Of a DNA stretch of 64,000 nt, positions 1 to 12,461 are shown piece after piece. The stretch is taken from NCBI RefSeq assembly GCF_037042905.1, contig NC_087248.1:25544001-25608000 (forward strand). Direction: 5' to 3'. Both the position numbers and the translations under genes were made by a program. The stretch comes from Lytechinus pictus. Lineage: Eukaryota. Each line of letters begins with the position of its first letter. Position 1 is the first letter of the stretch. A model generated the notes under the pieces. That model had not been told where the DNA came from, ran no database searches, and was given only the letters and a program-made list of their open reading frames with translations.

Positions 1-172
1 TAGTGAAATGCTGTTATAATGAGGTCAGGCAGAACAATTTCCTCATATAAAAAAATCATTTTGAGGTCCCAACTCTTTGTTTCTGGACTCTGTTGTAGCA
101 AGCATAGGAACCTGATATGTCAAGGACAACATCCTTTTTTAAGGTTCTCGTTATAATGGTATACCACTGTAG
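1..172 (-). mobile_element. End of a Tc1/pogo-like MITE inside a SAM-gene intron
   Basis: Minus strand reads TA|CAGTGGTATACCATTATAACGAG, with a recurring GTTATAA motif. Confidence 0.4.
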
Positions 173-687
173 TATTAAAATCACTGATGACCCAAATGGA
201 CGGGGACCACTGGGAAGGACACTCAGGCTGACAAGAATACTACCAATAACGCAGTATGCCATGTTCTAGGCAGGAACAATCAAAGTATTAAGTGGCACAC
301 ACATAAATTATTCATTTTTCTCATCTGTACCCAGCTTCCACTCCCTAGTTATATTACTTGATGAAGTTGGTAATTAATGGTGGAATCTCATCAGGCCCTT
401 TTACCTTACACCATAAGCATGCACACTCCTGACCAAAACCTTTTTTCTAATTTTCCCTTCAAATCAGGGTATCAGAGTGTCAGCTTTAGTGGCTCATTCA
501 AATAGCTGAAGTAACCACAAAGATTTGGTAAGCAGTCATGCGTGCCTGTAGAATCATACACACTGACCTTTATGACTTATGTAAAACCTGTGTGAAAAAA
601 GAGGTTCGTGCAAGACTGAAAGAGACTCATAACTATCCTTCCATGTGAGCCTTAAGAAATCTTTCTTTTCTTTTTAATAAGACATAC

Positions 688-1798
688 CATTCCAATGTCC
701 AAGAGATGAGGGAATTTTATAAGAGTTTCAGCCAAATCCGGACATTCAGCACTATGCAGTAAACTCCATCGGTATTCTGCTGTTTCTCTCATCAGGTCTC
801 TAACCTTTGATGGATCACTTATATGATTCATTTGTTCTGCAATCTGCTCCATCTTCTTCTTATCTGCATCATCTACATCAAATGAATTGCAAAATGCAAT
901 AAAGGCTAATAGTTACCTTAGAAGTTTCAGGACAAGGTTTGCAATGTGGAATGTGGGGACCATGTGTAAAAGAGGGACAAAAGTGTGTGAAGAATTGAGA
1001 AAGAGAAGGGTTGATGAGTGTTGTGTACAGGACGTGAGATGGAGAAAGATTTGTGGGAGTGTAAATGTTCGGATTTTTTTTTTTCTTTAAATCTTCTTGC
1101 AACTTTTAAGACCATTTTCATGAAAAATCTGGCATATTATGCTATGTAAGCTTTAGCAAGGTCTAAAATAGCCTAACCAGTTAAGGGTTAATACATACCA
1201 TGTGTGACAGGCACAGCATTTTCACTAGAAGTTCCTTCATCACATTCTTCAGAGAACATCACTGATTCCTGCTCCTCCTTAACCTTACTTCTCCGAAGAT
1301 TTCTCAGTTTATTCTCCAATATACCTGATGCCGTACATATTTTTGATCCTTTGGTATACCACTGTTCCTGCATTATGGGGAGGGAAAAAAGTACAATTTG
1401 TTGTATTGGAAGTGACAAATAAAGTTTAAACACATCTTTCTACTTCTAACTCCAAAAATGACAATTTTTATCACAGAATGTATCTATTTGAAAATAAGAG
1501 AGAATATAATACCTACTGCAACCACCTCCAGTGGGCAGAGACATAGAAAAAAAAGAGAAATAAAATAATGGGTGGTAAAAAGTTATGCGCATTTTGGTAC
1601 CTTCCTGATTTAAGTACAGCTTGATTGATTTCTTAACCGAACTAAGAGGCCTTCCATATGTGCCTTTCTACAGGGGAGTAATTAACAGATGTCAGCTGAC
1701 AGGGGGCAAGAGCCATAACAATTTCCCTGTAACTAAGTCCAAAATGTGCAGGCATAAGCCCCCCCCCCCCCCCCACCGTGAGCAGCCTGCCATGAAGC

Positions 1799-1853
<55 letters not shown>

Positions 1854-4800
1854 ATATAATTCTTTCTCCCTTTTAAAAAAATCTTTGTTGCCCAGTCGTT
1901 TCTTTCCTAAATAGCCCCTCCCCCTTTCCATCTTCCCTCTTTACCAATGAAAAGTCCCCTTCATTCTGCTCCTTTTTTATTTTCCAAGCTCTCTTATTCA
2001 TTTTTTTATGGTTTTTGTTTTCTTTCCTTGTCCTTTGTTATTCAAGACAATATGCATCCATACACATTCAAGCATGACAAATTAAGAGCAATATTTTTTA
2101 CTTACATATCCTTTTCCCTCCGGGTCTTTTAGGCATGGAAAGGCAACTACAATTGAGTGAGCCATTGCTTCTTTAACATCTGAGCTGGGTCTGAAACGTT
2201 AATTAATGACACAATTACAACATAATATGTCAGGTGTATTCAGGATTTTTATGACTTTTCAAATATCATTTCTCACAAGGGGGTGGGGGCAACCATGTTG
2301 TATAACCAATATACACACACTATCCCTGTAAACTAATATGTGCAAAAATGTATGTGATGTACATAAGACCATGGACCTAGTAGGTCCATGATAAGACCAA
2401 ATAACTCTGGGGCGAGTATGAACTGATCAAAAGGTACATGAGAGCTGGTCTTTTCACCAACTCATACCAAACAGGCATTAGCCTTTCTTGTAGGGAGTGG
2501 ATAGGTATGGATTATATCACCAATCCAGGACCCATAGGTCTTTGTTTCAAATTCGTTACCATGGCAACATTACATGCGATGGGCTGTGATTGAAGGCCTC
2601 CCCACTCTTCTATCAATTGATCTTCAAAAGCAACCTTTTTTACATGCCATTGTGTACAAAGGCATGTAAAAATGGTTGCCTTTGAAGATCAATTGATAGG
2701 GCGTTAAAAATGGCAAGAAAACAACAAAATGTATAAAATCTGTACCCTAAAATGAAAAAAAAAAAAATATTTCATACCTTATTTAGAGGGGGGGGGGGAG
2801 GGAATATATATATATTTATAACTTGTTCTGGTTATTGCCATATTGCATGGTCATAATGTGTTTAGAGTTTTTTTTTTTTTTTTTTTTTTATCTGAAATAT
2901 TGGGGTAAAAGGGATGCTGCTCTAGTCTAAAGCAGTTTCCTCAGGATTGGCAGTTATCAAAAATGCAATGATCTAAAAAGAAATATAGCACAAACTAGAG
3001 ATTGAAATATTTGTTGGCTATAAGAACTTCTTATTTTACTGTTTTTATTTTTATAAGTCTCTCCAATTTTCAACCATTCCGAACCATCAGTATTCATGCA
3101 CTACACATGTCAAATGTTTCTACATTCCAAAATGTAGTAAATTTCGACTCTTCAAACAACCATTAAAATATTATCCAATTTTAGGACTTACCTCTCACAA
3201 TAATTTTGTATGAGATGTTGAGCACACATATCAGCAATAACCCGTTGGGCTTCATTAGTGAGTATACGATCTTTGGTTATAGATGCACATGCTTTTTTGC
3301 CCTTAGCAGTCGTTTCCAGTATAGCTTGAACATCCTGAACAAAAAAAGTACAAGTGATGTTATGTTGTATTACTAAAACATGTATACAGTTGTTTTAAAA
3401 TTGTAAAATATATTACATAATAATAATAATAATAACAAAAGTAATAATAACAATAATATTAATACTGGTAAGAATAATAACAGCAAAATAGAATCCTATT
3501 ATCATTTTGTTTCACTCTATGCCTTCTGTACCTCTTCTTTTTTGCCAGATGCATCTATATATTATTGTAATAACTTTCTTTACTTGTGTATTTCATATGA
3601 TATATTGTTTATGAACTTTGAATTCTTCAAACATGTATATCTGCCTTGATTGATTTCAAAGAATATGCATGTTTATAATACCTGCACACTCTTAGTAACC
3701 AAAGATTTCTTATAACATCATTGCCCTTAGCATTAAACATGCTGAGATCATGGAGATCACAGGATGCAAAATCATGACTGCTGTCTGCTCTGGAACATCC
3801 TTAATGCAAACAAATTGGAACATAGTTGCTTGCTTTCAAAATGGAGCTTCAGGGGCTTGGTTTCATGATCAGAGACAAATATCTAACACCAGAGAGGTCA
3901 TGTAACTCTATAAACACAAACAAACAGATGCAATCCAATTTTTTTTTCAAGCTGGAAATAAACGCCTGCTGGCTGAAATGCGGATCCCTTAAATTACATG
4001 GCTATATGAATGGTAATCAAAAGTAAATACTCACAAATTTGCAAGATTTCTGTTTCTTCAATGGAGGTAGTTTTGCAGGCACTGCCTCTGTTGATGTTGA
4101 TGGTTTGATGACATAAGGTTCTACCACTTTTTCGGCCTGGGAAAGTATGGACTGATCTTCATCACTTTCCAAACTGCTGAAAAGGCTAGTTGAATCGTCT
4201 ACAGATACTGCAGAAGCTACTGAGTTCATCAAATCAAAGGAACTATCACCAGCTTCAGCATCATTGGATCTATTAAAATGCTGAGAGGACATGAAATCAG
4301 GAAATGTAACAGGAGCAACAGTCACGACTTCCATTGCGCTAGCTTCCACCTGCATTAAACAAACAAAAACATGTAAAAGTGTCCTCATTAAATTGTGTCT
4401 ACATCATATCTTCTTATACTAAAATGAAGTTGGATTTACATTATGTCTGAAATTTTTCTTTGAAATATGCATGAGGTTTTTTTTAATTCCAAAGGATACA
4501 GGGTTTACTTTTTTGGACTTACTGCACAGGCTAGATATGCTACAATGAACAGGTTTAAAAAAAAAAAAAAAAAAGGATAATGGATTTCTCACACTGTATT
4601 TCAGAAATCCATCAGACCATGTTGTAACGAGTGACAATGTACCAGCTGTGGTCTGAGCGCTCATAGTTTGTGCATGTATGAAAAGGTCTATGCTCCGTAA
4701 GATCATCTGGTCTCTTAACTTGAAATTCCTTTGTCCTTTTTTCTTTCACTGCATAAGCTTGGTAGTGATCATCAAAATAGAGTGTGTCCCATGGTTGCAA

Positions 4801-7800
4801 AATCAAATACAACTGGGATTCATGGTTTACTATTTGCACTACCTTAGCAAATACAGGCAAGTCATCTTTCCAGTCAATTAAGATCATCACATTGCACCTG
4901 TACATGTAGCCATTGACTATGATGGTTTTGCACACAATTACTTCAGTATCAAGAGGGCATCCAACCAAATTACTTATGATATCAGCATGATCCAATAGTG
5001 AAGCTGGGGTAACTGTTTGACTCTGAATTTCAATAGAAGTACTCTCCATAGGTTGTTTCCCCAAGTTCTTGTATGCCTGCTCCATCTGATGTTTGGATGC
5101 CAAGGTTTTGGCTATGTTCTTATAGTTATAACATGTCCTCGCCCATTGTTTCAATGGATTGTGTTTAGCCTCTAGTCTCATGCATGTGTACTGGTGGAGT
5201 GGGCCCAAGAGACGTATGGCTCTTGGATAGTGCAACAAGTTGTGTGCTTTTGGTATGAGGTGGCGTTCAGGAAACAGCTCTAAAAACAAAGTATGATGCT
5301 CCTTTATTTTTGACTTCAAGTAGTAAGTTCCATCAATACTGATAACGGGTGAACACACTACTTTATATATTTCTAACAGCATGATGAACAATTCCCAATA
5401 CATGTTATTTTTTGGAACTTTGTCTCCGATCATGAGTGGCAGAAAAAGAGCAAGACATTGCATTTGGGATGCTTTTTGCCCACTGCTTCCAAATGGATTA
5501 TTTAGCTGACTCTGAGTTAAGGGACAAGGCCTGTTCTTTTGGTCATTGAAACCATAGCTAAATGACCCTATTCTGCTGTTGATAAGATCCAAGCTGAAAA
5601 TTCTTTGATCAGAAATGAATTCTTTTAGCACAAGTTTCATTTCAATGGGAAGTAGTCCTTCCAAAAAATCATGCATTATATCCACAGTTGCATTGTGTGA
5701 TACATGAAAGTAGCTCAGGTTATTAAATACTGATGATCTTGCCAAACCAGTTAATGGCAAGGCATTTTGCCTCAAGTCATGCTCAATGTTTTCACACGTG
5801 CGGAGAGAATCCTGATCTTCTACAACTTGAGTGTAAGTAATTTGTTTGATAGTCTTACAAAAACGGCAAAAGTAATTTGCTGAAAAACTTCCTGCATATC
5901 CCAGGACTGTGTTCATCGCCAAATTGTCCCCAATTATCTGGAATAGTTTTGGCTTTACCATTCCTTTGTATCCTTCACATGTGACATTTATGCCACTCAC
6001 AGACACAATTTCCAGGTCACGAACAATGGGAGAAAAAATGGAGTCCAGTCCGTACTTTGAAACTAGTGTTGATTTGGCTAGCGCTACCAAAAGAATATTA
6101 TCTAACTTTGCTTGGTATTTTGGATGCAAACAAAGCAATTTTAAATACACGCCTAATAACTTGTGTTGTCCTTTTTTAGATCCTAATGGATTTGCAGTTT
6201 CAAATTCATCAGTGTAGAGTAACAGTTGAATTGTAATTTCCCCATCATTTGCCTGTCTAGATTGCTTATAATACAATCCATCTTGGTAGGTTTCCAGAAT
6301 AATTTTGTCACTGACTTTCTGTTTATATTGAAGTATACTGAAAATACATCCAGGTCTTTCAAGAAAAGTTTTCAAATTTTCCTCTATAGGAATATACTGA
6401 AATGTTTCAGCTACTCTGTCTTGGTGTGTCCTTCCAGACTCCCTGTCAATTGCTTGCTTATGAATGTAACCTAATGTAATATCCACTGGTTCTACAAGAG
6501 CTCCCTTCTCCTTTGCATGTTGTTTTTGTTGGTATTCAGTTGTGAGGTTTAAAAATGGCTCTTTGACTGATTGCAAAGTTGATTGAATGTTTTCAATGCT
6601 TTCTTTGGAAGGACATACACTGTCATTGGCATCTTTTATAATAGGGGCTACAACTTCTTCAACTGCACATACAATGTTATGAATAAGTTCGCTGGTCCCT
6701 TCAATAAATCTTTGCACAGTACAAGTTGGTATGGAGGAACTTTTAAAATCAGCTATGAAACTTGCTGCTGCATCTTTAACTGCTGCTCCTATTTCTGTTG
6801 AGGATCTTGGGAGAACTTCACTTATGGTGTCTTCTTGGTTATTCTCAGGAAATGTACCAATCACTGCAGCTTCCTGCTGAGCTAACTGTTGAGGAGAATT
6901 TGACCCTTGAAGTGCAGCAACTTCATTTAATGAATTATGATCGGAGTCCAAGTGCCTTTTATAGGCATAGCCAGAGTAATAAATATTTGTACAATTTCCC
7001 TGTCCACATATGATCTTTCCTTTTGTTTTTGTAGTTATGTTGTGGACAGTTCTCAAGTGTTTCCACAGTTTCTCATTATCTGCTAGTTTTAGAAGACATT
7101 TAAAACAGCTAAACATATTCTTGGCATGTGCAGCAACTTCTCATCTTCTATAACTAACCTGACTTTTATGATGCAGGAAATGTTTCACAAATTTCAGTCT
7201 TTGTCCCAGCTTTGGGATAATCATTTCCAGCATGGCACGGTCATTGATATCAATCAGCATAATCGATTCCTCATCAAATTCTTGATCTGTGAATAAAGAA
7301 GACAAAGAGAAAAAGAAAGAAAACATTTATTTCAAATATGAATAATTCTATTTAAACTTGAGATGGATTTTGGGGTTTTACATTTTTTTTAAATAAACAT
7401 GGGTATGGCTTAGAAATGATAGACATTGCGATTCTCGACAGAAAAAAAGTAACGGAATGTCACTGCAATGCCTCTTCTTGTTGTGGACATATTGTGTGAC
7501 ACATCAAGGAGGGCTGATTCATCCTCCCTCCAGCTTTTTTAAGGGTTAAGTTGACAAGGTAAACTATTTTAGTTTTTTTTGGTCAATTTTAGGGGCTGGG
7601 CATTGATATTTCCATTGAAGTCTTGACATCATCCCTCTCTCTCTATCTCTTAGCCTACTCTTAACATTTGCTTTGACCATTTTTTCCGGCAAAATTTACA
7701 CTGTCAGTGCTGCAATTACTTCTTCGAGTGGGGGGGGGGGGGGCATTGGCAGGGCAAGGTTCAAGTTTAGGGGTAGGGCATGGCCAGTGTGGTGAAAGGT

Positions 7801-9272
7801 AAAAAAAAAAAAGTTGTTGGGGATGGGGGAAAAGCTTTTGACTGGGGGGGGGGGGGGGAGGGGTGGGAGGATAGTGCCCCCCAAAGCAAATATTGCAATC
7901 ATTTTTGCATCTCTTTTTTTTGTTTTTACCTTGGTGTTTCATGATTTACACATCCTTGACACTGCCAAACTGTGTTTTCAATTTGATATTGATGTTTTTC
8001 AAAAAAATAGCACCAGAATTTTCCCATAGATTTTGTACAGGTTGCACTGCTTCCTGTAGCACCACTTACAGCAACACCGCTGGTGTTCAGACTTTAATTA
8101 CAAATAACTCAAATATTTTACAATCAACAAAAATGAAAATTTCCAGATTATGAAATACCTCCTGGAGATAATGAGAAAAAATACACAACTTTACCAAAAT
8201 ATGTAACAGCACCACCTTCTTTGGTGGGGTGACCCCATGACACATCACAAAAAATACCAAGTTTTTCAACATTAAAATTTAATGCCAAAATAATTAAATA
8301 AAATGTACTTCAGCTGCCCACGCTCCTGCAATGGGGTGGGATTTTGACTCAATTTTGAAAAACATGCACGCAAGTTGCATAAGGGGGCCTAACAAAGTGA
8401 TAAGTTGCCCCCCCCCCCCTCGCTGTCAACTTTGAGTATAGCAAGGTCAGCCCTTCCCAATCCTGATTCCAAAATTGTAATCCATCAAAATGATGCAGAA
8501 ATAAACTGGGGAGAAAATGGCCTGGCATATAGAAGTTGACTTTAAAAGCGGCCAAGCTAGGCTAAACAAAGTAGTAGGTCCAGATCTACCTTAGACTCCT
8601 AATTCTAAACTTTATTAGACTAAGTCCCACTCAGGCAGTCAGGGGACCTACCAGCACATGCAAATCTTGTACACACAAATCCACTGGGTTTTCAACAATT
8701 CCGTGGGGACATAACTGGATTTGAAATGAGCTAAATCCCCAGGTCTAACGTAGCACACATCACTCATACAATGCACAAATTATGGCACACATGTTGTGCC
8801 AGGTAATAACCTTGCATTAATAAACAGAAGTCACAACTCCCAACCCTTGGCCTATCATCTCTTCCTTTTTTCAATGAGGCTGGACCTAGACCTGCATCAA
8901 ACGTATACGTGTCAATTTCAGTTAGCGCCTAAAATCTGAGCAATATCTTGTCTGCTATAGCCCTTTTAACTGGTTGCGAAAATACAAATTATTTAGTGCA
9001 GCAGACTTCAAACGCCGATAATCGGAGGGCTCCGCACGGACGCCAGGGGCCGCCGTTGGCCTTCGCGACGGGGGCTTCCGAACTGAAACGCGACATCAAT
9101 CACCTTCCAATTTAGTATTTACAATCATCTTTGAGATGTTCTTTGGATCTATATGATGAATTAATAAAATTAATATAATCTAAATAATATAAATAGTAAT
9201 GTGTTTACCTTTAAATGAAGTGATTACATCTTGGGGCATCCCCCAAGACATCAGCAGCGACTCCATGTCCAT
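688..9272 (-). CDS. Spliced SAM-domain (SAMD3-like) accessory gene of the EnSpm element, 3' incomplete; exons 9272-9209, 7286-7159, 4349-4035, 3334-3192, 2190-2106, 1367-1199, 872-688
   Basis: All junctions are GT-AG with compatible phases (1,0,0,2,0,1,0), giving 1089 nt of open frame. Exons 1+2 give MDMESLLMSWGMPQDVITSFKDQEFDEESIMLIDINDRAMLEMIIPKLGQRLKFVKHF, a SAM consensus. Later motifs include AFPCLKDPEGKGYEQWY..SGILENKLRNLRR and LMRETAEYR..FPHLLD. The start context is GCCATCATGG. Confidence 0.8.
925..1075 (+). pseudogene. RTE-clade LINE APE endonuclease N-terminal fragment
   Basis: RFAMWNVGTMCKRGTKVCEELRKRRVDECCVQDVRWR matches the APE start pattern xTWNVgTm...rr.vDilcvQEtRW. Confidence 0.7.
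4612..7116 (-). CDS. CACTA/EnSpm (CMC superfamily) DDE transposase with two N-terminal C2H2 zinc fingers, 834 aa, intact single ORF
   Basis: C2H2 motifs CFKC..HLRTVH and CGQGNC..HLDSDH. Candidate catalytic residues lie in LLYTDEFETANPLG, GDNLA and MRLEAKH. CMC signatures C(2)C (CRFC), [M/L]H (DIMHD) and H(3)H (HNLLH) are present. The ORF lies inside a CACT-terminated element. Confidence 0.9.
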   Translation of the reverse strand: MFSCFKCLLKLADNEKLWKHLRTVHNITTKTKGKIICGQGNCTNIYYSGYAYKRHLDSDHNSLNEVAALQGSNSPQQLAQQEAAVIGTFPENNQEDTISEVLPRSSTEIGAAVKDAAASFIADFKSSSIPTCTVQRFIEGTSELIHNIVCAVEEVVAPIIKDANDSVCPSKESIENIQSTLQSVKEPFLNLTTEYQQKQHAKEKGALVEPVDITLGYIHKQAIDRESGRTHQDRVAETFQYIPIEENLKTFLERPGCIFSILQYKQKVSDKIILETYQDGLYYKQSRQANDGEITIQLLLYTDEFETANPLGSKKGQHKLLGVYLKLLCLHPKYQAKLDNILLVALAKSTLVSKYGLDSIFSPIVRDLEIVSVSGINVTCEGYKGMVKPKLFQIIGDNLAMNTVLGYAGSFSANYFCRFCKTIKQITYTQVVEDQDSLRTCENIEHDLRQNALPLTGLARSSVFNNLSYFHVSHNATVDIMHDFLEGLLPIEMKLVLKEFISDQRIFSLDLINSRIGSFSYGFNDQKNRPCPLTQSQLNNPFGSSGQKASQMQCLALFLPLMIGDKVPKNNMYWELFIMLLEIYKVVCSPVISIDGTYYLKSKIKEHHTLFLELFPERHLIPKAHNLLHYPRAIRLLGPLHQYTCMRLEAKHNPLKQWARTCYNYKNIAKTLASKHQMEQAYKNLGKQPMESTSIEIQSQTVTPASLLDHADIISNLVGCPLDTEVIVCKTIIVNGYMYRCNVMILIDWKDDLPVFAKVVQIVNHESQLYLILQPWDTLYFDDHYQAYAVKEKRTKEFQVKRPDDLTEHRPFHTCTNYERSDHSWYIVTRYNMV

Positions 9273-10254
9273 GATGGCTTCTTTCACACATCACCAGTTC
9301 ACCACGTGCGTGTATAGGTGTAAACCTCAAACTTGTAAAGTGCGTGTGTTGATGATTATCCAAAATGGGGTAACATCTCAATTTTTTACCAAGAGCCGAC
9401 AAATGGGGTAACATTTCATTCTTTTAAACCAAGATCCGGGTTTCATTTTACCCCTGTGCAGGTGTAAACTGTTACTCGCAACCTGTGTACCCTTGTTTCA
9501 TGCTTCTACACATATATGTGTACATTTTTACACATATTTTTACCACAACTGTTTAACCACAAGTTTCTTTACCACCCATTTCTAAGAGTGTATCGAATGA
9601 TGCCAAGCCATAACTATCGGAATAAATGGCAATAATAAATTGGAAAGGTCCAAACGGGTGATATCAAATACAAATGAGTCTCTCGCTCATTGCATGAGAT
9701 TTGGTAGCCCTGAACAATTTATATAATACAACGTTCAAAGAACGACAATGATACAGTCATCCCCCCAAATACGAAAACAAAATGATGAATGCAATATCTG
9801 TATAACGAAGGAATTGCCCATAACTGTAATATTTTATGTAGAGTTTGAATGACGTCATATTTTCCCTCATTCTGTTAAAAAGGCAAAATAATGATATTCT
9901 CCACTTTTTTTTTACTGGATCCAATGCACCTTCGAAATCTGCATATAGGCTACACATACACACCAAATATTAATACATAAGCCAATGCAATACCAATTAC
10001 CTGTAAGTAACAAATTGAACACTCCACTGGTATGACTACCGCTACATAAAACTCAAGGCATGGGACTTCAATGAATGATCATGCAATTGTGCATTATCTA
10101 GCTTAAACATTTTATTTAACATTTTTTTTATGCAATATGAAATTGAAATAAAACAGTTCTGATCACTTACTGTACTTGAAACAAAGGATCAGTTCCTAAC
10201 TTATGCCAAAGAAGGTAGTTTAGGTCCAGAATTGTAGAGAATTGCACCACCATA

Positions 10255-10420
10255 CACTGTAAAAAATGAAGTGCTAATTTAGCACTTCCAGTGCTTGTAT
10301 AGTGACTGCACTACCAGTGCTGATTTTCTAGTTCAAATTTAAACTAGAAAATCAGCTCGCAAAGTGCAGTTACTATACAAGCACTGTAAGTGCTAAATCA
10401 GCACTTAATTTTTTACAGTG
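10255..10420. mobile_element. Palindromic CACTG MITE (non-autonomous EnSpm-type), TA TSD
   Basis: TA|CACTGTAAAAAA...TTTTTTACAGTG|TA; the element is a near-full-length hairpin. Confidence 0.85.
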
Positions 10421-10849
10421 TAATTTTAAGCTGTAGGACGCATGTCCATTTCCATTTGTAGAACCGAATTTCCCGCCAATTCTGTAACTGACAGAATACC
10501 TGATAGCTACCTGAAACCAACTGCTTAACCATCGGGAAGACATTCACTAGCTGATGTCTTCCTGATTGTTGAGTGAGACGCTGTTTAAAAAAAATGATTT
10601 TGCTGAGTGTTTCTAATAGTTATTATGTGCCAATTGGCAAGCCGATGTCTTGCTGATAACTGGACAAGAAACTATCAAGAAGACATCCGGTAGGTGATGA
10701 TTGCTGATAGCTACCAAATAACTGTCTAAATGCTATCCGATAACCATCGGATGACTATCCGGTGGCTAACGGATGGCATTCTTTTTTGATATGGGGTATA
10801 GGCCCTACCTCTGCCTTTACTACCTATGCCATTATTTCCTCTGCCATTT

Positions 10850-11000
10850 TTTTCCCCAAGCCAAAGGTTCTCATCACCGCTGTTCAACATTCGTTTTACT
10901 TCAATGCCAGAGTCACCGATTGAATGCTCTCGACGAGAGCGTCAAGGAATGTACCACAATTACTCGTTTCAGGTCGCTTTGCCGCGTATGCAAAATGTTA
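10850..11000 (+). pseudogene. Degenerate LINE (CR1/L2-like) ORF2 C-terminus
   Basis: ..LNALDESVKECTTITRFRSLCR resembles the WNxLpxxik...FK C-terminal motif. Confidence 0.4.
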
Positions 11001-12461
11001 TTTTTCGTACATGTACATGCAAAGCTCTTTTTTGTAACTCTCTTCCATTACCATTCTTCTCATGTCTGTTTAACCTCTCTGCCCTTCCCAAGGTCTCTCT
11101 TCCTCGTTTCGTTTTTTTTTTTTTTTTTTTCTTCTGTGTATATTTTATTCATTCCTCTCTATTCTTTTCCCAATGTTGCAGCGCAGGTGTGTGTGTGGGT
11201 GTGTTGGTGTGGTTGTGGGTACATGGGGATATCTGTGTTAACGGTTAGACTTTTGCTAGATACTTATAGGTCTTGTGTGTTTGTTTCTTTTTTTTTTCGT
11301 AAGCACATATTCGATGCCTGCACCAATGTGCCAGCTCCATGGCTATGCTGTTTATTGGAAAAAATATACTTCTTCCCTCTTGTTGTCTTCAACGTTTCCC
11401 CTATAACACAACGGTGCGGACTGTGAGTGCTGACCTGTGCTCTCAAGTTGGATTACTTTGCCTTCTTTTACATAATTTCAAATATTGATTACATCTATTT
11501 TCAATTATCAACTCGAGTTTGGAACTTCGTTATATAAAAAGAGCCCTCACTTCAATATTTTTTTACTCCCTAATCATTTTTTTTTGCTTTACTATTTATT
11601 ATTATTACTTCTTATGTATTGCTGCATCAATATTGCCACATATTTATCTCAGCTATCAATCTGATAAATTAAACATTCACTTACCTTTCACATTTTCACT
11701 CTATTCTTTCATAATTCATCATAATTAGTCAATTTCTTAGGGACAATTCAATAAAAAAACTCACCCATCAAATATCGGTCACTAGGCATTTAAATTTTGA
11801 TTACCAGCCAGGGAGTTAGAGAGAGAGGGAGATAAAGAGAGAGAGGGATAAAGAGAGAGGGATGGGGGAGAGGGGGAGATGGAGCTTGGAGGTACATGAT
11901 TTGTAATGTGTAAAAGAACACGGAGAAGAATGTCCTTTTAACCAAGTCTTACCCTATTTCGCCCCATTGCGTGCAAAAGGTACCAATATATTATCCCGAC
12001 TCCCATTATGCCCATGAACACACACTGCTAAAATGATTTACTTACAAATGCAGTTCCTGCTCGCTCATTCATTAAAATTCAATTAAGTATTTCTTGAAAT
12101 TTGCTCAAGAAACAGATTTTGATCTCAAATTTGATTGATCATTGATCTATAATAAAATACTTAACTTTGCAAATTCCAAAGGACTCTACTCTAAAAAAAA
12201 TTGGAAGGTTAATTATTGCTAACCCCAGTCAAGCCTACTCTATCAGGAGGGGAGAAGGGGGGAGGGTACTTATTGTTCTGTTGGCTTTTTTTGTAATTCA
12301 TGTTTTATTGATCCATTTCATCTATATTAAGCATAACAAAACATCCATGATATAACGGATTACATTATAAAATTAAAATGAAGATGGCGTAGAAAATAAC
12401 ATGACATTTATATCATCAACCTTCTTCACCCATGTAAGTCCTTATCTCACCCCTAGTCCTC

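What the first reader, a model, noticed from the sequence alone, without database searches (positions are those of the whole stretch)
688..9590. Animal CACTA transposon with its transposase nested in the intron of a spliced SAM-domain gene (same strand, probably one transcription unit)
Seen: 7 in-phase exons encode a SAM-domain protein, and the intact 834-aa transposase fills most of the 2.8 kb intron 2. Its ATG is only ~42 nt after the donor, leaving no room for an intronic promoter. Known: maize En/Spm makes TnpA and TnpD by alternative splicing of one transcript, and SAM domains oligomerise or bind RNA. Inference: splicing versus retention of intron 2 switches between a SAM accessory or regulator protein and transposase mRNA. 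The SAM protein may be a TnpA analogue and a relative of host SAMD3-like genes. Gene finders would probably mis-annotate this locus.
Basis: partly seen in the sequence, partly recalled or inferred. Interest (0 to 1): 0.85.

Follow-up and report, generated by a model that had tools for sequence, protein, structure and literature searches.

The report
Sea-urchin transposon: transposase nested in gene
This is an intact 15.9-kb cut-and-paste DNA transposon of the sea urchin Lytechinus pictus whose transposase sits inside an intron of its own second gene, so one transcript yields either protein depending on splicing, and that second protein resembles human SAMD3, a gene of unknown function.

Summary
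All seven exons are in phase with GT..AG borders. The gene continues for three more exons left of the window, giving 10 exons and 564 aa, identical to RefSeq LOC129272648 isoform X2 of Lytechinus pictus. The intact 834-aa transposase ORF starts 42 nt after the exon-2 donor.

Empty-site paralogues define a 15,934-bp element with 12-bp TIRs (CACTCTTAGAAA) and a TA duplication. An internal-deletion copy on contig C15 has the same ends and a TA duplication.

The transposase carries the CMC/EnSpm signature: D303, D397, E649, CxxC and Hx3H.

RNA-derived contigs join exon 1 to exon 2 and then run unspliced into the transposase ORF. I infer that the transposase is RefSeq isoform X1 of the same gene.

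The same nesting occurs in a sea cucumber, a sea star and at least five divergent L. pictus families. A fish element has the two genes in tandem, 19 nt apart.

The second protein has a SAM domain, a disordered linker and a 400-aa domain with no solved relative. Its best Swiss-Prot fold matches are human and mouse SAMD3.

Its function and the route of transposase translation remain inferred. Other first-stage notes of this scan report the same architecture elsewhere in this genome.

The parts
9591..9592 (.). TA target-site duplication, right copy
   Evidence: Four empty-site paralogues of the host repeat read ...GGCTA|TCGAATG... across the insertion point. TA is present at both ends of the element. 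The left copy lies outside the window at L002:3655-3656.
9579..9590 (-). Right terminal inverted repeat, CACTCTTAGAAA (12 bp)
   Evidence: It is a perfect inverted match to L002:3657-3668 at the other end. The C15 deletion copy has both termini, flanked by TA on each side. The C5 and C7 copies retain the left terminus only.
9273..9578 (-). 5' subterminal region holding the promoter and 5' UTR, with TTACCCC and TGTGTAAAA motifs
   Evidence: An RNA contig reaches 9400, so transcription starts within about 190 bp of the TIR. Seven of the nine TTACCCC sites in the element lie within 400 bp of the ends, against 0.45 expected (P = 2.6e-8).
9209..9272 (-). Exon 1 (coding part): first half of the SAM domain, ATG in a strong context
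   Evidence: The exon 1 to exon 2 junction (9209 to 7286) is present in contigs of two runs.
7287..9208 (-). Intron 1
   Evidence: It has GT..AG borders. The RNA-derived contigs of X1 and X2 give it no coverage.
7159..7286 (-). Exon 2: second half of the SAM domain. The donor after 7159 is the switch point.
   Evidence: The X2 contig ends at 7157, two bases past the exon. Those two bases (GT) are shared by the intron and by exon 3.
7117..7158 (-). 42-nt spacer between the donor and the transposase ATG. It contains one in-frame TGA (7141-7143).
   Evidence: If the donor is not used, the SAM reading frame ends after 69 codons, eight codons before the transposase ATG in the same frame.
4612..7116 (-). 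Intronless 834-aa CMC/EnSpm-type DDE transposase ORF with an N-terminal C2H2 zinc finger
   Evidence: D303, D397 and E649, plus C417-x2-C420 and H625-x3-H629, are conserved across 36 homologues. Of those homologues, 12 match Pfam Transposase_21 and 5 match DUF4218. RNA contigs cover the ORF at a depth like that of the exons.
4587..4593 (-). Second donor: last exon base 4593, GTGAGA at 4587-4592, 19 nt after the transposase stop. It joins to acceptor 4349.
   Evidence: RefSeq isoform X3 (P0075) is the ORF from 4706 to 4593 joined to exons 3-10. The motif is conserved in the 93%-identical contig L007. A comparable first exon overlapping the end of the transposase occurs in family C9a_40.
4035..4349 (-). 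Exon 3: acidic disordered linker with a PPLKKQK motif, possibly a nuclear localisation signal
   Evidence: pLDDT is below 50 for residues 73-164. The exon 3 to exon 4 junction is present in contigs of X1 and X2.
3192..3334 (-). Exon 4: start of the SAMD3-like C-terminal domain
2106..2190 (-). Exon 5
1199..1367 (-). Exon 6
688..872 (-). Exon 7
1..687 (-). Start of intron 7. The element continues 6,343 bp beyond the window's left edge, with exons 8-10, a 3.3-kb 3' region and the left TIR.
   Evidence: Exons 8-10 are at L002 9731-9896, 8846-8964 and 7012-7332. The left TIR is at L002:3657.

Best explanation
Window 1-9590 is the right-hand 60% of one 15,934-bp autonomous DNA transposon of the CMC/EnSpm (CACTA-like) group in Lytechinus pictus (C4:25537657-25553590).

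Shown:
- The element is bounded by 12-bp TIRs and a TA duplication.
- It has internally deleted derivatives elsewhere in the genome.
- It carries one annotated gene on the minus strand, whose transcripts begin within about 190 bp of the right TIR.
- Exons 1-2 encode a SAM domain.
- The transposase ORF begins 42 nt after the exon-2 donor.
- RNA contigs join exon 1 to exon 2 and read on into that ORF.
- A RefSeq isoform uses the 7159-to-4349 splice to give a 564-aa protein, made of SAM, a disordered linker and a 400-aa SAMD3-like domain.
- Another isoform uses a second donor 19 nt after the transposase stop.

Inferred:
- Choice of the exon-2 donor decides which protein the transcript can make. 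When the donor is used, the transposase ORF is removed as an intron and the accessory protein is made. When it is skipped, the mRNA carries a 69-codon SAM reading frame followed by the transposase ORF.
- Transposase can then be translated only by reinitiation, leaky scanning or read-through of the in-frame TGA. This would keep it scarce relative to the accessory protein.
- If the second donor is then used, eight exon junctions lie downstream of the transposase stop. Such an mRNA would be a predicted target of nonsense-mediated decay.
- By analogy with other two-protein cut-and-paste elements, the accessory protein probably oligomerises through SAM and acts at the TTACCCC-rich subterminal regions or on the transposase.
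For: - Gene model. It is identical to RefSeq isoform X2.
- Ends of the element: four empty sites. The C15 copy has the same TIRs, TA on both sides and an internal deletion joining window 6292 to the 3' region.
- Transposase family: conserved D, D, E, CxxC and Hx3H, and Pfam hits in homologues. This matches the CMC signature quoted in PMC12730594. Zebrafish CMC-EnSpm elements have CACTC... TIRs and a 2-bp duplication (PMC13189230).
- Transcripts: X1 contig 6 spans 9288-9209 joined to 7286, then runs to 6916 without mismatch. X2 contig 13 ends at the branch point. Exon 3-4 junctions are present. Intron 1 is uncovered.
- No TIRs flank the transposase alone.
- Conservation of the nesting: Apostichopus; Asterias, in an 11.6-kb element with a CACTG TIR and TA duplication; and 9 of 10 sampled transposase families of this genome. 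A SAM exon lies directly upstream of the ATG in at least five of these families.
- Linkage also holds in a fish, in tandem order with a 19-nt spacer.
- Subterminal motif enrichment.
Against: - The 7159-to-4349 junction itself was not bridged by any laid contig. It rests on the RefSeq model and on a contig ending at the branch point.
- Runs X1 and X2 are only guessed to be RNA. Their spliced contigs argue that they are. Depth is about 5.
- The contigs carry a 6-nt deletion in exon 1, and one of them also a 3-nt insertion upstream of the ATG, relative to the reference, so they come from another allele or haplotype.
- The raw stranded RNA reads (X14, X15) were too few (13-18) to show starts, strand or ratios.
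- An additional internal start site for the transposase is not excluded.
- Nothing shows how the transposase is translated. The in-frame single stop is not conserved: it is present in 3 of 6 lineages examined.
- The accessory domain has no solved relative and no known activity.
- The complex prediction gave no verdict.
- Only one full-length copy exists in the assembly, so present-day mobility is not shown.
Confidence: 0.8

Rival explanations
1. A host SAM-domain gene was hit by an independent transposase-bearing insertion in its intron 2. The two are unrelated neighbours.
For: Nested transposon insertions in introns are common. The transposase ORF is intronless while the surrounding gene has nine introns.
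Against: - No inverted repeats or duplication flank the transposase alone.
- The TIRs and TA duplication enclose both genes.
- The deletion derivative keeps both outer ends.
- The same arrangement recurs in three echinoderm classes and in families only 35-52% identical.
- The two genes are also linked in a fish, and fused SAM-transposase gene models occur in insects.
Confidence: 0.03
2. There are two overlapping but separate transcription units. The transposase has its own promoter in intron 1 or exon 2, and the read-through contig is an unspliced by-product.
For: About 2 kb of intron 1 lies upstream and could hold a promoter. The transposase ATG has a usable context. The 69-codon upstream reading frame makes translation from the long transcript inefficient.
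Against: - The contig joining spliced exons 1-2 to the transposase ORF shows that at least some transposase RNA starts at the shared promoter.
- Intron 1 is not covered in X1 or X2.
- The tight spacing of the SAM exon and the ATG is conserved: 42 nt here, 37 nt in the 50% family, and a few codons in Asterias and Apostichopus.
Confidence: 0.1
3. The locus is a domesticated, immobile host gene that keeps a transposon-like layout. The isoforms serve the host.
For: There is only one full-length copy in the assembly. Both ORFs are intact and expressed. It is annotated as an ordinary gene.
Against: - The TIRs are a perfect 12-bp pair and the TA duplication is intact.
- The insertion is absent from paralogous repeat copies.
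- Deletion derivatives 91-97% identical lie at other sites, and the complete one (C15) has its own TA duplication.
- The genome holds at least 25 further intact transposase ORFs of related families.
Confidence: 0.07

Closest known systems
Maize En/Spm (CACTA), with TnpA and TnpD made from one transcript by alternative splicing
   Same: - Termini begin CACT.
- The DDE transposase is related to Transposase_21/DUF4218.
- The subterminal regions are rich in short repeated motifs.
- There is one promoter near one end.
- Two proteins arise from one pre-mRNA by alternative splicing, as recalled from established knowledge of En/Spm.
   Different: - The duplication is 2 bp (TA), not 3 bp.
- The transposase is a single intronless ORF lying wholly inside an intron of the accessory gene.
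- The accessory protein (SAM plus a SAMD3-like domain) gave no Pfam match to any TnpA family.
- The shared 5' exons encode a folded SAM domain.
Zebrafish CMC-EnSpm elements (EnSpm-N49B_DR and the large autonomous element cited in PMC13189230)
   Same: They are animal hosts, their TIRs begin CACTC, and the duplication is 2 bp. A Danio aesculapii transposase is 32% identical and has a homologous accessory gene on the same strand.
   Different: In the fish locus examined, the accessory gene lies wholly upstream of the transposase (tandem, 19-nt spacer) and is not wrapped around it. The fish duplication reported is CA, not TA.
Vertebrate SAMD3 (Q8N6K7, Q8C4H2)
   Same: It has the same full-length layout: an N-terminal SAM domain followed by a large C-terminal domain. 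It gives the best Swiss-Prot fold matches, E 2.7e-11 and 1.2e-10, against 2e-2 for the next hit. ESM Atlas clusters named SAMD3-like and SAMD3 match at TM 0.65 and 0.47.
   Different: SAMD3 is a single-copy host gene with no linked transposase (from knowledge, not tested here). Sequence identity is about 14%. No sequence-level test was possible with these tools.
PIF/Harbinger two-gene elements (transposase plus a Myb-like partner)
   Same: It is a cut-and-paste element that needs, or at least carries, a second non-catalytic protein. This is an analogy only.
   Different: The transposase superfamily is unrelated, the partner fold is unrelated, and the genes are separate, not nested.

Membership tests
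CMC (CACTA/EnSpm-Mirage-Chapaev) DNA transposons | Termini 5'-CA(C)...(G)TG-3' as inverted repeats | tested here: met
   The 12-bp TIR CACTCTTAGAAA is present at both ends. The C15 copy has both termini, and C5 and C7 retain the left one. Asterias has CACTGTAAAAA.
CMC (CACTA/EnSpm-Mirage-Chapaev) DNA transposons | Short target duplication of 2-5 bp (3 bp in classical EnSpm) | tested here: met
   TA (2 bp) is shown by four empty sites and by a second copy. It is within the 2-5 bp range given in PMC12730594 and equals the zebrafish CMC-EnSpm length. It is not the classical 3 bp.
CMC (CACTA/EnSpm-Mirage-Chapaev) DNA transposons | [quoted passage not shown] | tested here: met
   D303, D397, C417-x2-C420, H625-x3-H629 and E649 are invariant or nearly so across 36 homologues. 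The signature is as quoted.
CMC (CACTA/EnSpm-Mirage-Chapaev) DNA transposons | Match to Pfam Transposase_21 (tnp2) or DUF4218 | tested here: inconclusive
   This protein scores E 0.078 and 0.068, below the cut-offs. Of 36 homologues, 12 match Transposase_21 and 5 match DUF4218 at E <= 0.01, with best E 4e-6.
En/Spm-type single transcription unit giving two proteins | Transposase and accessory mRNAs share a promoter and 5' exons and differ by splicing | tested here: met
   A contig joins exon 1 to exon 2 and continues into the transposase ORF. RefSeq isoforms X2 and X3, and probably X1, belong to one gene. The skipping junction itself was not seen in the laid contigs.
En/Spm-type single transcription unit giving two proteins | Accessory protein homologous to TnpA | tested here: not met
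   Pfam gives no TnpA-type family for P0077 or its orthologues. The fold has no solved relative.
En/Spm-type single transcription unit giving two proteins | Accessory protein binds the subterminal repeats | not testable with these tools
   Only the motif enrichment at both ends is shown.
SAM domain | Five-helix SAM fold at the N-terminus | tested here: met
   Residues 1-70 have pLDDT above 90. Matches to solved SAM domains are Z 8.8 with rmsd 1.5 A over 64 residues (EphA5 SAM, 5zrz) and Z 8.2-8.8 for the next eight solved SAM domains. The orthologue P0093 passes the SAM_2 cut-off, while P0077 itself does not.
SAMD3 family | Full-length similarity: SAM plus the large C-terminal domain | tested here: met
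   Foldseek against Swiss-Prot models gives human and mouse SAMD3 as the top two hits over residues 5-548, with probability 1.00. Atlas clusters named SAMD3 and SAMD3-like also match. This is a fold-level test only. The TM-scores (0.32-0.65) are modest because of the flexible linker.
SAMD3 family | Significant sequence-level homology to SAMD3 orthologues | not tested
   No SAMD3 sequence was available to the tools. None of the 20 looked-up clusters among the phmmer hits is named SAMD3.

The most novel reading that the evidence does not exclude
Vertebrate SAMD3 is a domesticated copy of the accessory gene of an ancient, metazoan-wide clade of CMC/EnSpm transposons. In the echinoderm branch of that clade, the transposase ORF has been placed inside the accessory gene. 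A single splice-site choice after the SAM exons, plus a SAM upstream reading frame, then sets the ratio of transposase to partner protein as a built-in self-limiting switch.
Probability: 0.45. Interest if true: 0.75.

Novelty: new variant of a known kind. Interest (0 to 1): 0.62.

Why it matters
Animal CACTA-like elements are catalogued mostly as transposase ORFs and short non-autonomous copies. Here a complete, apparently intact, transcribed element shows how the two genes are organised and co-expressed, and the layout is conserved across echinoderm classes.

The finding has three uses.
- It gives a concrete, testable model of transposase dosage control by splice-site choice in an animal DNA transposon.
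- It explains hundreds of "uncharacterized" or "SAM domain-containing" proteins, and fused gene models, in fish, insect, springtail, spider and echinoderm annotations.
- It gives a first lead on the origin and possible activity of SAMD3, a conserved vertebrate gene of unknown function whose large domain has no solved structure.

Full-text searches found no paper linking SAMD3 or SAM domains to CACTA/EnSpm elements.

Tried and rejected
- Pfam on the accessory protein gave only a weak or absent SAM match and nothing for the C-terminal domain.
- A word-indexed search with the family alignment returned only two known relatives and was uninformative.
- Foldseek against the PDB and an exhaustive VIA-align run on the isolated C-terminal domain gave no convincing relative. 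The best was Z 6.2 over a 77-residue helical stretch.
- The complex prediction of transposase 240-834 with the C-terminal domain gave no verdict (score 0.24, mark 0.34). It counts neither for nor against binding.
- An exact look-up of the 564-aa product for cDNA contigs found nothing on record.
- Raw stranded RNA reads from X14 and X15 yielded only 13-18 reads, many only partly matching, so they were not used for strand, starts or ratios.
- Read-through of the in-frame TGA to give a SAM-transposase fusion was considered. The in-frame single stop recurs in the 50% family and in Asterias. It is absent in Apostichopus and in two other L. pictus families, so it is not a conserved feature.
- No separate TIRs were found around the transposase.
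- Rfam found no RNA family in the element.
- Looking up names for 20 clusters of homologues found none called SAMD3.
- No TIRs were found for the Apostichopus and Danio loci within the fetched flanks.
Full report
**1. What is in the sequence**

On the minus strand the window carries seven exons at 9209-9272, 7159-7286, 4035-4349, 3192-3334, 2106-2190, 1199-1367 and 688-872. Exon 1 begins at the ATG, every acceptor is AG and every donor is GT. Joined, they read as 363 open codons.

A single 834-codon ORF at 4612-7116, on the same strand, fills most of the 2.8-kb interval between exons 2 and 3. Its ATG is 42 nt after the donor.

The reading frame does not end at 688. Homologous gene models from other echinoderms pointed to three further exons in the 10 kb left of the window (L002). 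With them the product is 564 aa and ends in a stop. This model is letter-for-letter identical to RefSeq XP_063954790.1, LOC129272648 isoform X2 of Lytechinus pictus. That also names the genome, because the contig length equals that of C4.

**2. It is a transposon, and where it ends**

The sequence just outside 9590 belongs to a host repeat with several copies on the same chromosome. In four of these copies the repeat runs straight through the point where the window is interrupted, and it resumes 6,343 bp left of the window start.

At the two break points the element reads TA|CACTCTTAGAAA... and ...TTTCTAAGAGTG|TA. The empty sites have a single TA. The element is thus 15,934 bp (C4:25537657-25553590), with a perfect 12-bp TIR and a TA duplication.

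Other copies in the genome are as follows.
- A 6.3-kb copy on C15 has the same TIRs and TA on both sides. An internal deletion joins the middle of the transposase ORF (window 6292) to the 3' non-coding region. This is the usual form of a non-autonomous derivative.
- A partial copy lies on C5 and a left-end fragment on C7.
- These copies are 91-97% identical to the window copy, apart from a 144-bp terminal stretch of the C7 fragment that is identical.

No inverted repeats flank the transposase ORF alone. The heptamer TTACCCC occurs nine times in the element, and seven of those lie within 400 bp of an end (P = 2.6e-8).

**3. The transposase**

Relatives are found in sea cucumbers, sea stars, sea urchins, teleosts and insects.

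An alignment of 36 homologues keeps D303, D397 and E649. [quoted passage not shown] That is the signature quoted for the CMC/EnSpm-Mirage-Chapaev-Transib group in PMC12730594.

The window's protein is below the Pfam cut-offs for Transposase_21 and DUF4218. Twelve and five of the 36 homologues, respectively, match these families.

A 2-bp duplication with CACTC... termini is what a zebrafish study reports for CMC-EnSpm elements (PMC13189230).

The L. pictus genome holds at least 25 further uninterrupted transposase ORFs of related families, 27-52% identical.

**4. One transcription unit**

Logan contigs of two runs were laid on 3950-9700. The runs are labelled only as probable RNA, but their contigs are spliced and leave intron 1 uncovered.
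- Both runs contain the exon 1 to exon 2 junction (9209 to 7286).
- In run X1 the same contig continues without mismatch through the exon-2 donor and into the transposase ORF, to 6916. Transposase-bearing RNA can therefore start at the shared promoter.
- In run X2 the contig stops at 7157. This is exactly where the retained form (GTTAGT...) and the spliced form (GTGGAA...) diverge.
- The exon 3 to exon 4 junction is present in both runs.
- The transposase ORF is covered in pieces, at a depth like that of the exons.
- The 5' end of one contig reaches 9400, about 190 bp from the TIR.

The contigs carry a 6-nt deletion in exon 1, and the X2 contig also a 3-nt insertion upstream of the ATG, relative to the reference. 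In the exon 2 and transposase stretch they match the window copy exactly, whereas the C15 copy differs there at seven positions in the X1 contig's stretch and two in the X2 contig's. They therefore come from another allele of this type of element.

RefSeq lists the 564-aa product as isoform X2. It also lists a 538-aa isoform X3, whose first exon overlaps the end of the transposase ORF and uses a donor 19 nt after its stop (last base 4593) to reach exon 3. The 834-aa transposase is on record from the same contig, and I infer that it is isoform X1.

The 7159-to-4349 junction itself was not bridged by a laid contig, and the raw-read runs gave too few reads to help.

**5. Conservation**

*Nested order in echinoderms.*
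- In Apostichopus japonicus the SAM exons, the transposase ORF and the C-terminal exons lie in the same order on one strand. RefSeq models nest the transposase in a 603-aa gene.
- In Asterias amurensis an 11.6-kb element has near-identical 22-nt TIRs beginning CACTG and a TA duplication. It nests the transposase in a 530-aa gene.
- In L. pictus itself, ten divergent families were sampled. Nine have accessory-domain exons downstream of the transposase on the same strand. At least five have a SAM-type exon ending a few tens of nucleotides before the transposase ATG.

*Tandem order elsewhere.*
- In Danio aesculapii the homologous accessory gene lies wholly upstream, and its stop is 19 nt before the transposase ATG.
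- A beetle model fuses SAM, accessory domain and transposase in that order.
- AlphaFold cluster hits include fusions in both orders.

The two genes are therefore linked across Metazoa, and the nested order is the echinoderm form.

**6. The accessory protein**

phmmer finds 528 cluster representatives at E <= 1e-3. The 20 clusters looked up come from crinoid, brittle star, sea cucumber, many teleosts, springtails, a beetle and a spider. All are unnamed or called "SAM domain-containing", and many are multi-copy.

AlphaFold2 models give three parts.
- A confident SAM bundle at residues 1-70.
- A disordered acidic linker at residues 73-164.
- A compact 400-residue domain, with pLDDT 90.6 when folded alone.

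The SAM part matches solved SAM domains at Z 8-9. The large domain has no convincing solved relative.

Against Swiss-Prot models, the two best hits are human and mouse SAMD3 over nearly the full length (E 2.7e-11 and 1.2e-10). The next hit is at 2e-2. Atlas clusters named SAMD3-like and SAMD3 match at TM 0.65 and 0.47.

I take homology with SAMD3 as likely. The direction (domestication versus capture) was not tested. The wide linkage to transposases favours domestication.

**7. How it most likely works**

*Shown.* One promoter lies near the right end. Exons 1-2 are shared. The donor after exon 2 either removes the transposase ORF as an intron or leaves it in the RNA. A second donor lies just after the transposase stop.

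*Inferred.*
- Use of the first donor gives the accessory protein.
- Skipping it gives an mRNA in which ribosomes first translate a 69-codon SAM reading frame from a strong ATG. They can reach the transposase ATG, eight codons after an in-frame TGA, only inefficiently.
- With the second donor used, the transposase stop lies upstream of eight exon junctions. That is the classical trigger for nonsense-mediated decay.
- Both features would hold the transposase well below its partner.
- The partner's role is an analogy to other two-protein elements. It would involve oligomerisation through SAM and action at the motif-rich ends or on the transposase. It is not supported by any direct test here, and the complex prediction gave no verdict.

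**8. Comparison and novelty**

The element is a member of the animal CMC/EnSpm group by its termini, its duplication length and its catalytic signature.

It works like maize En/Spm in making two proteins from one pre-mRNA. It differs in three ways: the accessory protein is unrelated to TnpA, the transposase is an intronless ORF inside an intron, and the shared exons encode a SAM domain.

Full-text searches found no paper connecting SAMD3 or SAM domains with CACTA/EnSpm elements. Repbase entries could not be consulted.

The locus is already annotated in RefSeq as an uncharacterised gene with isoforms, so the sequence features are not new. Their reading as a complete transposon with a splice switch and a SAMD3-like partner is new as far as I could check.

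Two other first-stage notes of this scan describe the same architecture elsewhere in this genome. My own survey of ten families agrees with them.

Noticed in passing
window 9591-10270, and L002:3100-3656: The element inserted into a host repeat about 1.1 kb long. The repeat has at least five other copies, 78-98% identical over the aligned pieces, within 0.5 Mb on the same chromosome (C4:25.63, 25.87, 25.92, 26.01 and 26.02 Mb). Four of them served as empty sites.
   Followed up: partly
window 7114-7159: The SAM exon 2 and the transposase ORF are in the same frame, separated by a single TGA. The same in-frame single stop is seen in the 50%-identical L. pictus family (TAA) and in Asterias. It is absent in Apostichopus and in two other families.
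   Followed up: yes
S. purpuratus proteins P0036, P0078, P0079, and L. pictus P0081, P0089: A related family has at least six S. purpuratus loci. Each is annotated with three isoforms: an 895-aa fusion of the first ~430 transposase residues to accessory exons 3-10, a 538-aa SAM-accessory protein, and a 462-aa form. All share the same acceptor exon. The Diadema antillarum model P0028 has the same junction. This could be an internal donor in the transposase ORF or an amplified deletion derivative.
   Followed up: partly
L012 (Danio aesculapii) 5195-12430: The fish relative has the accessory gene and the transposase in tandem on one strand, with only 19 nt between the stop and the ATG. This suggests coupled expression there too.
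   Followed up: partly
window 2610-2699: A 90-bp near-perfect palindrome (91% self-complementary) lies inside intron 4 of the accessory gene.
   Followed up: no
L002:9107-9359 (intron 8, left of the window): A repeat of about 255 bp has dozens of copies at about 75% identity across all chromosomes. It is probably a SINE or MITE nested in the element.
   Followed up: no
window 8908-8997: Four raw RNA reads of run X14 show a joint that goes back 90 nt (8997 to 8908) with 13 extra letters. The neighbouring 116-bp GC-rich stretch at 8964-9079 also occurs in the C5 partial copy.
   Followed up: no
G000 C1:43.01-43.27 Mb and C31:0.21-0.39 Mb: Clusters of many related transposase ORFs, intact and broken, lie within a few hundred kb. 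These are possible transposon-rich islands.
   Followed up: no
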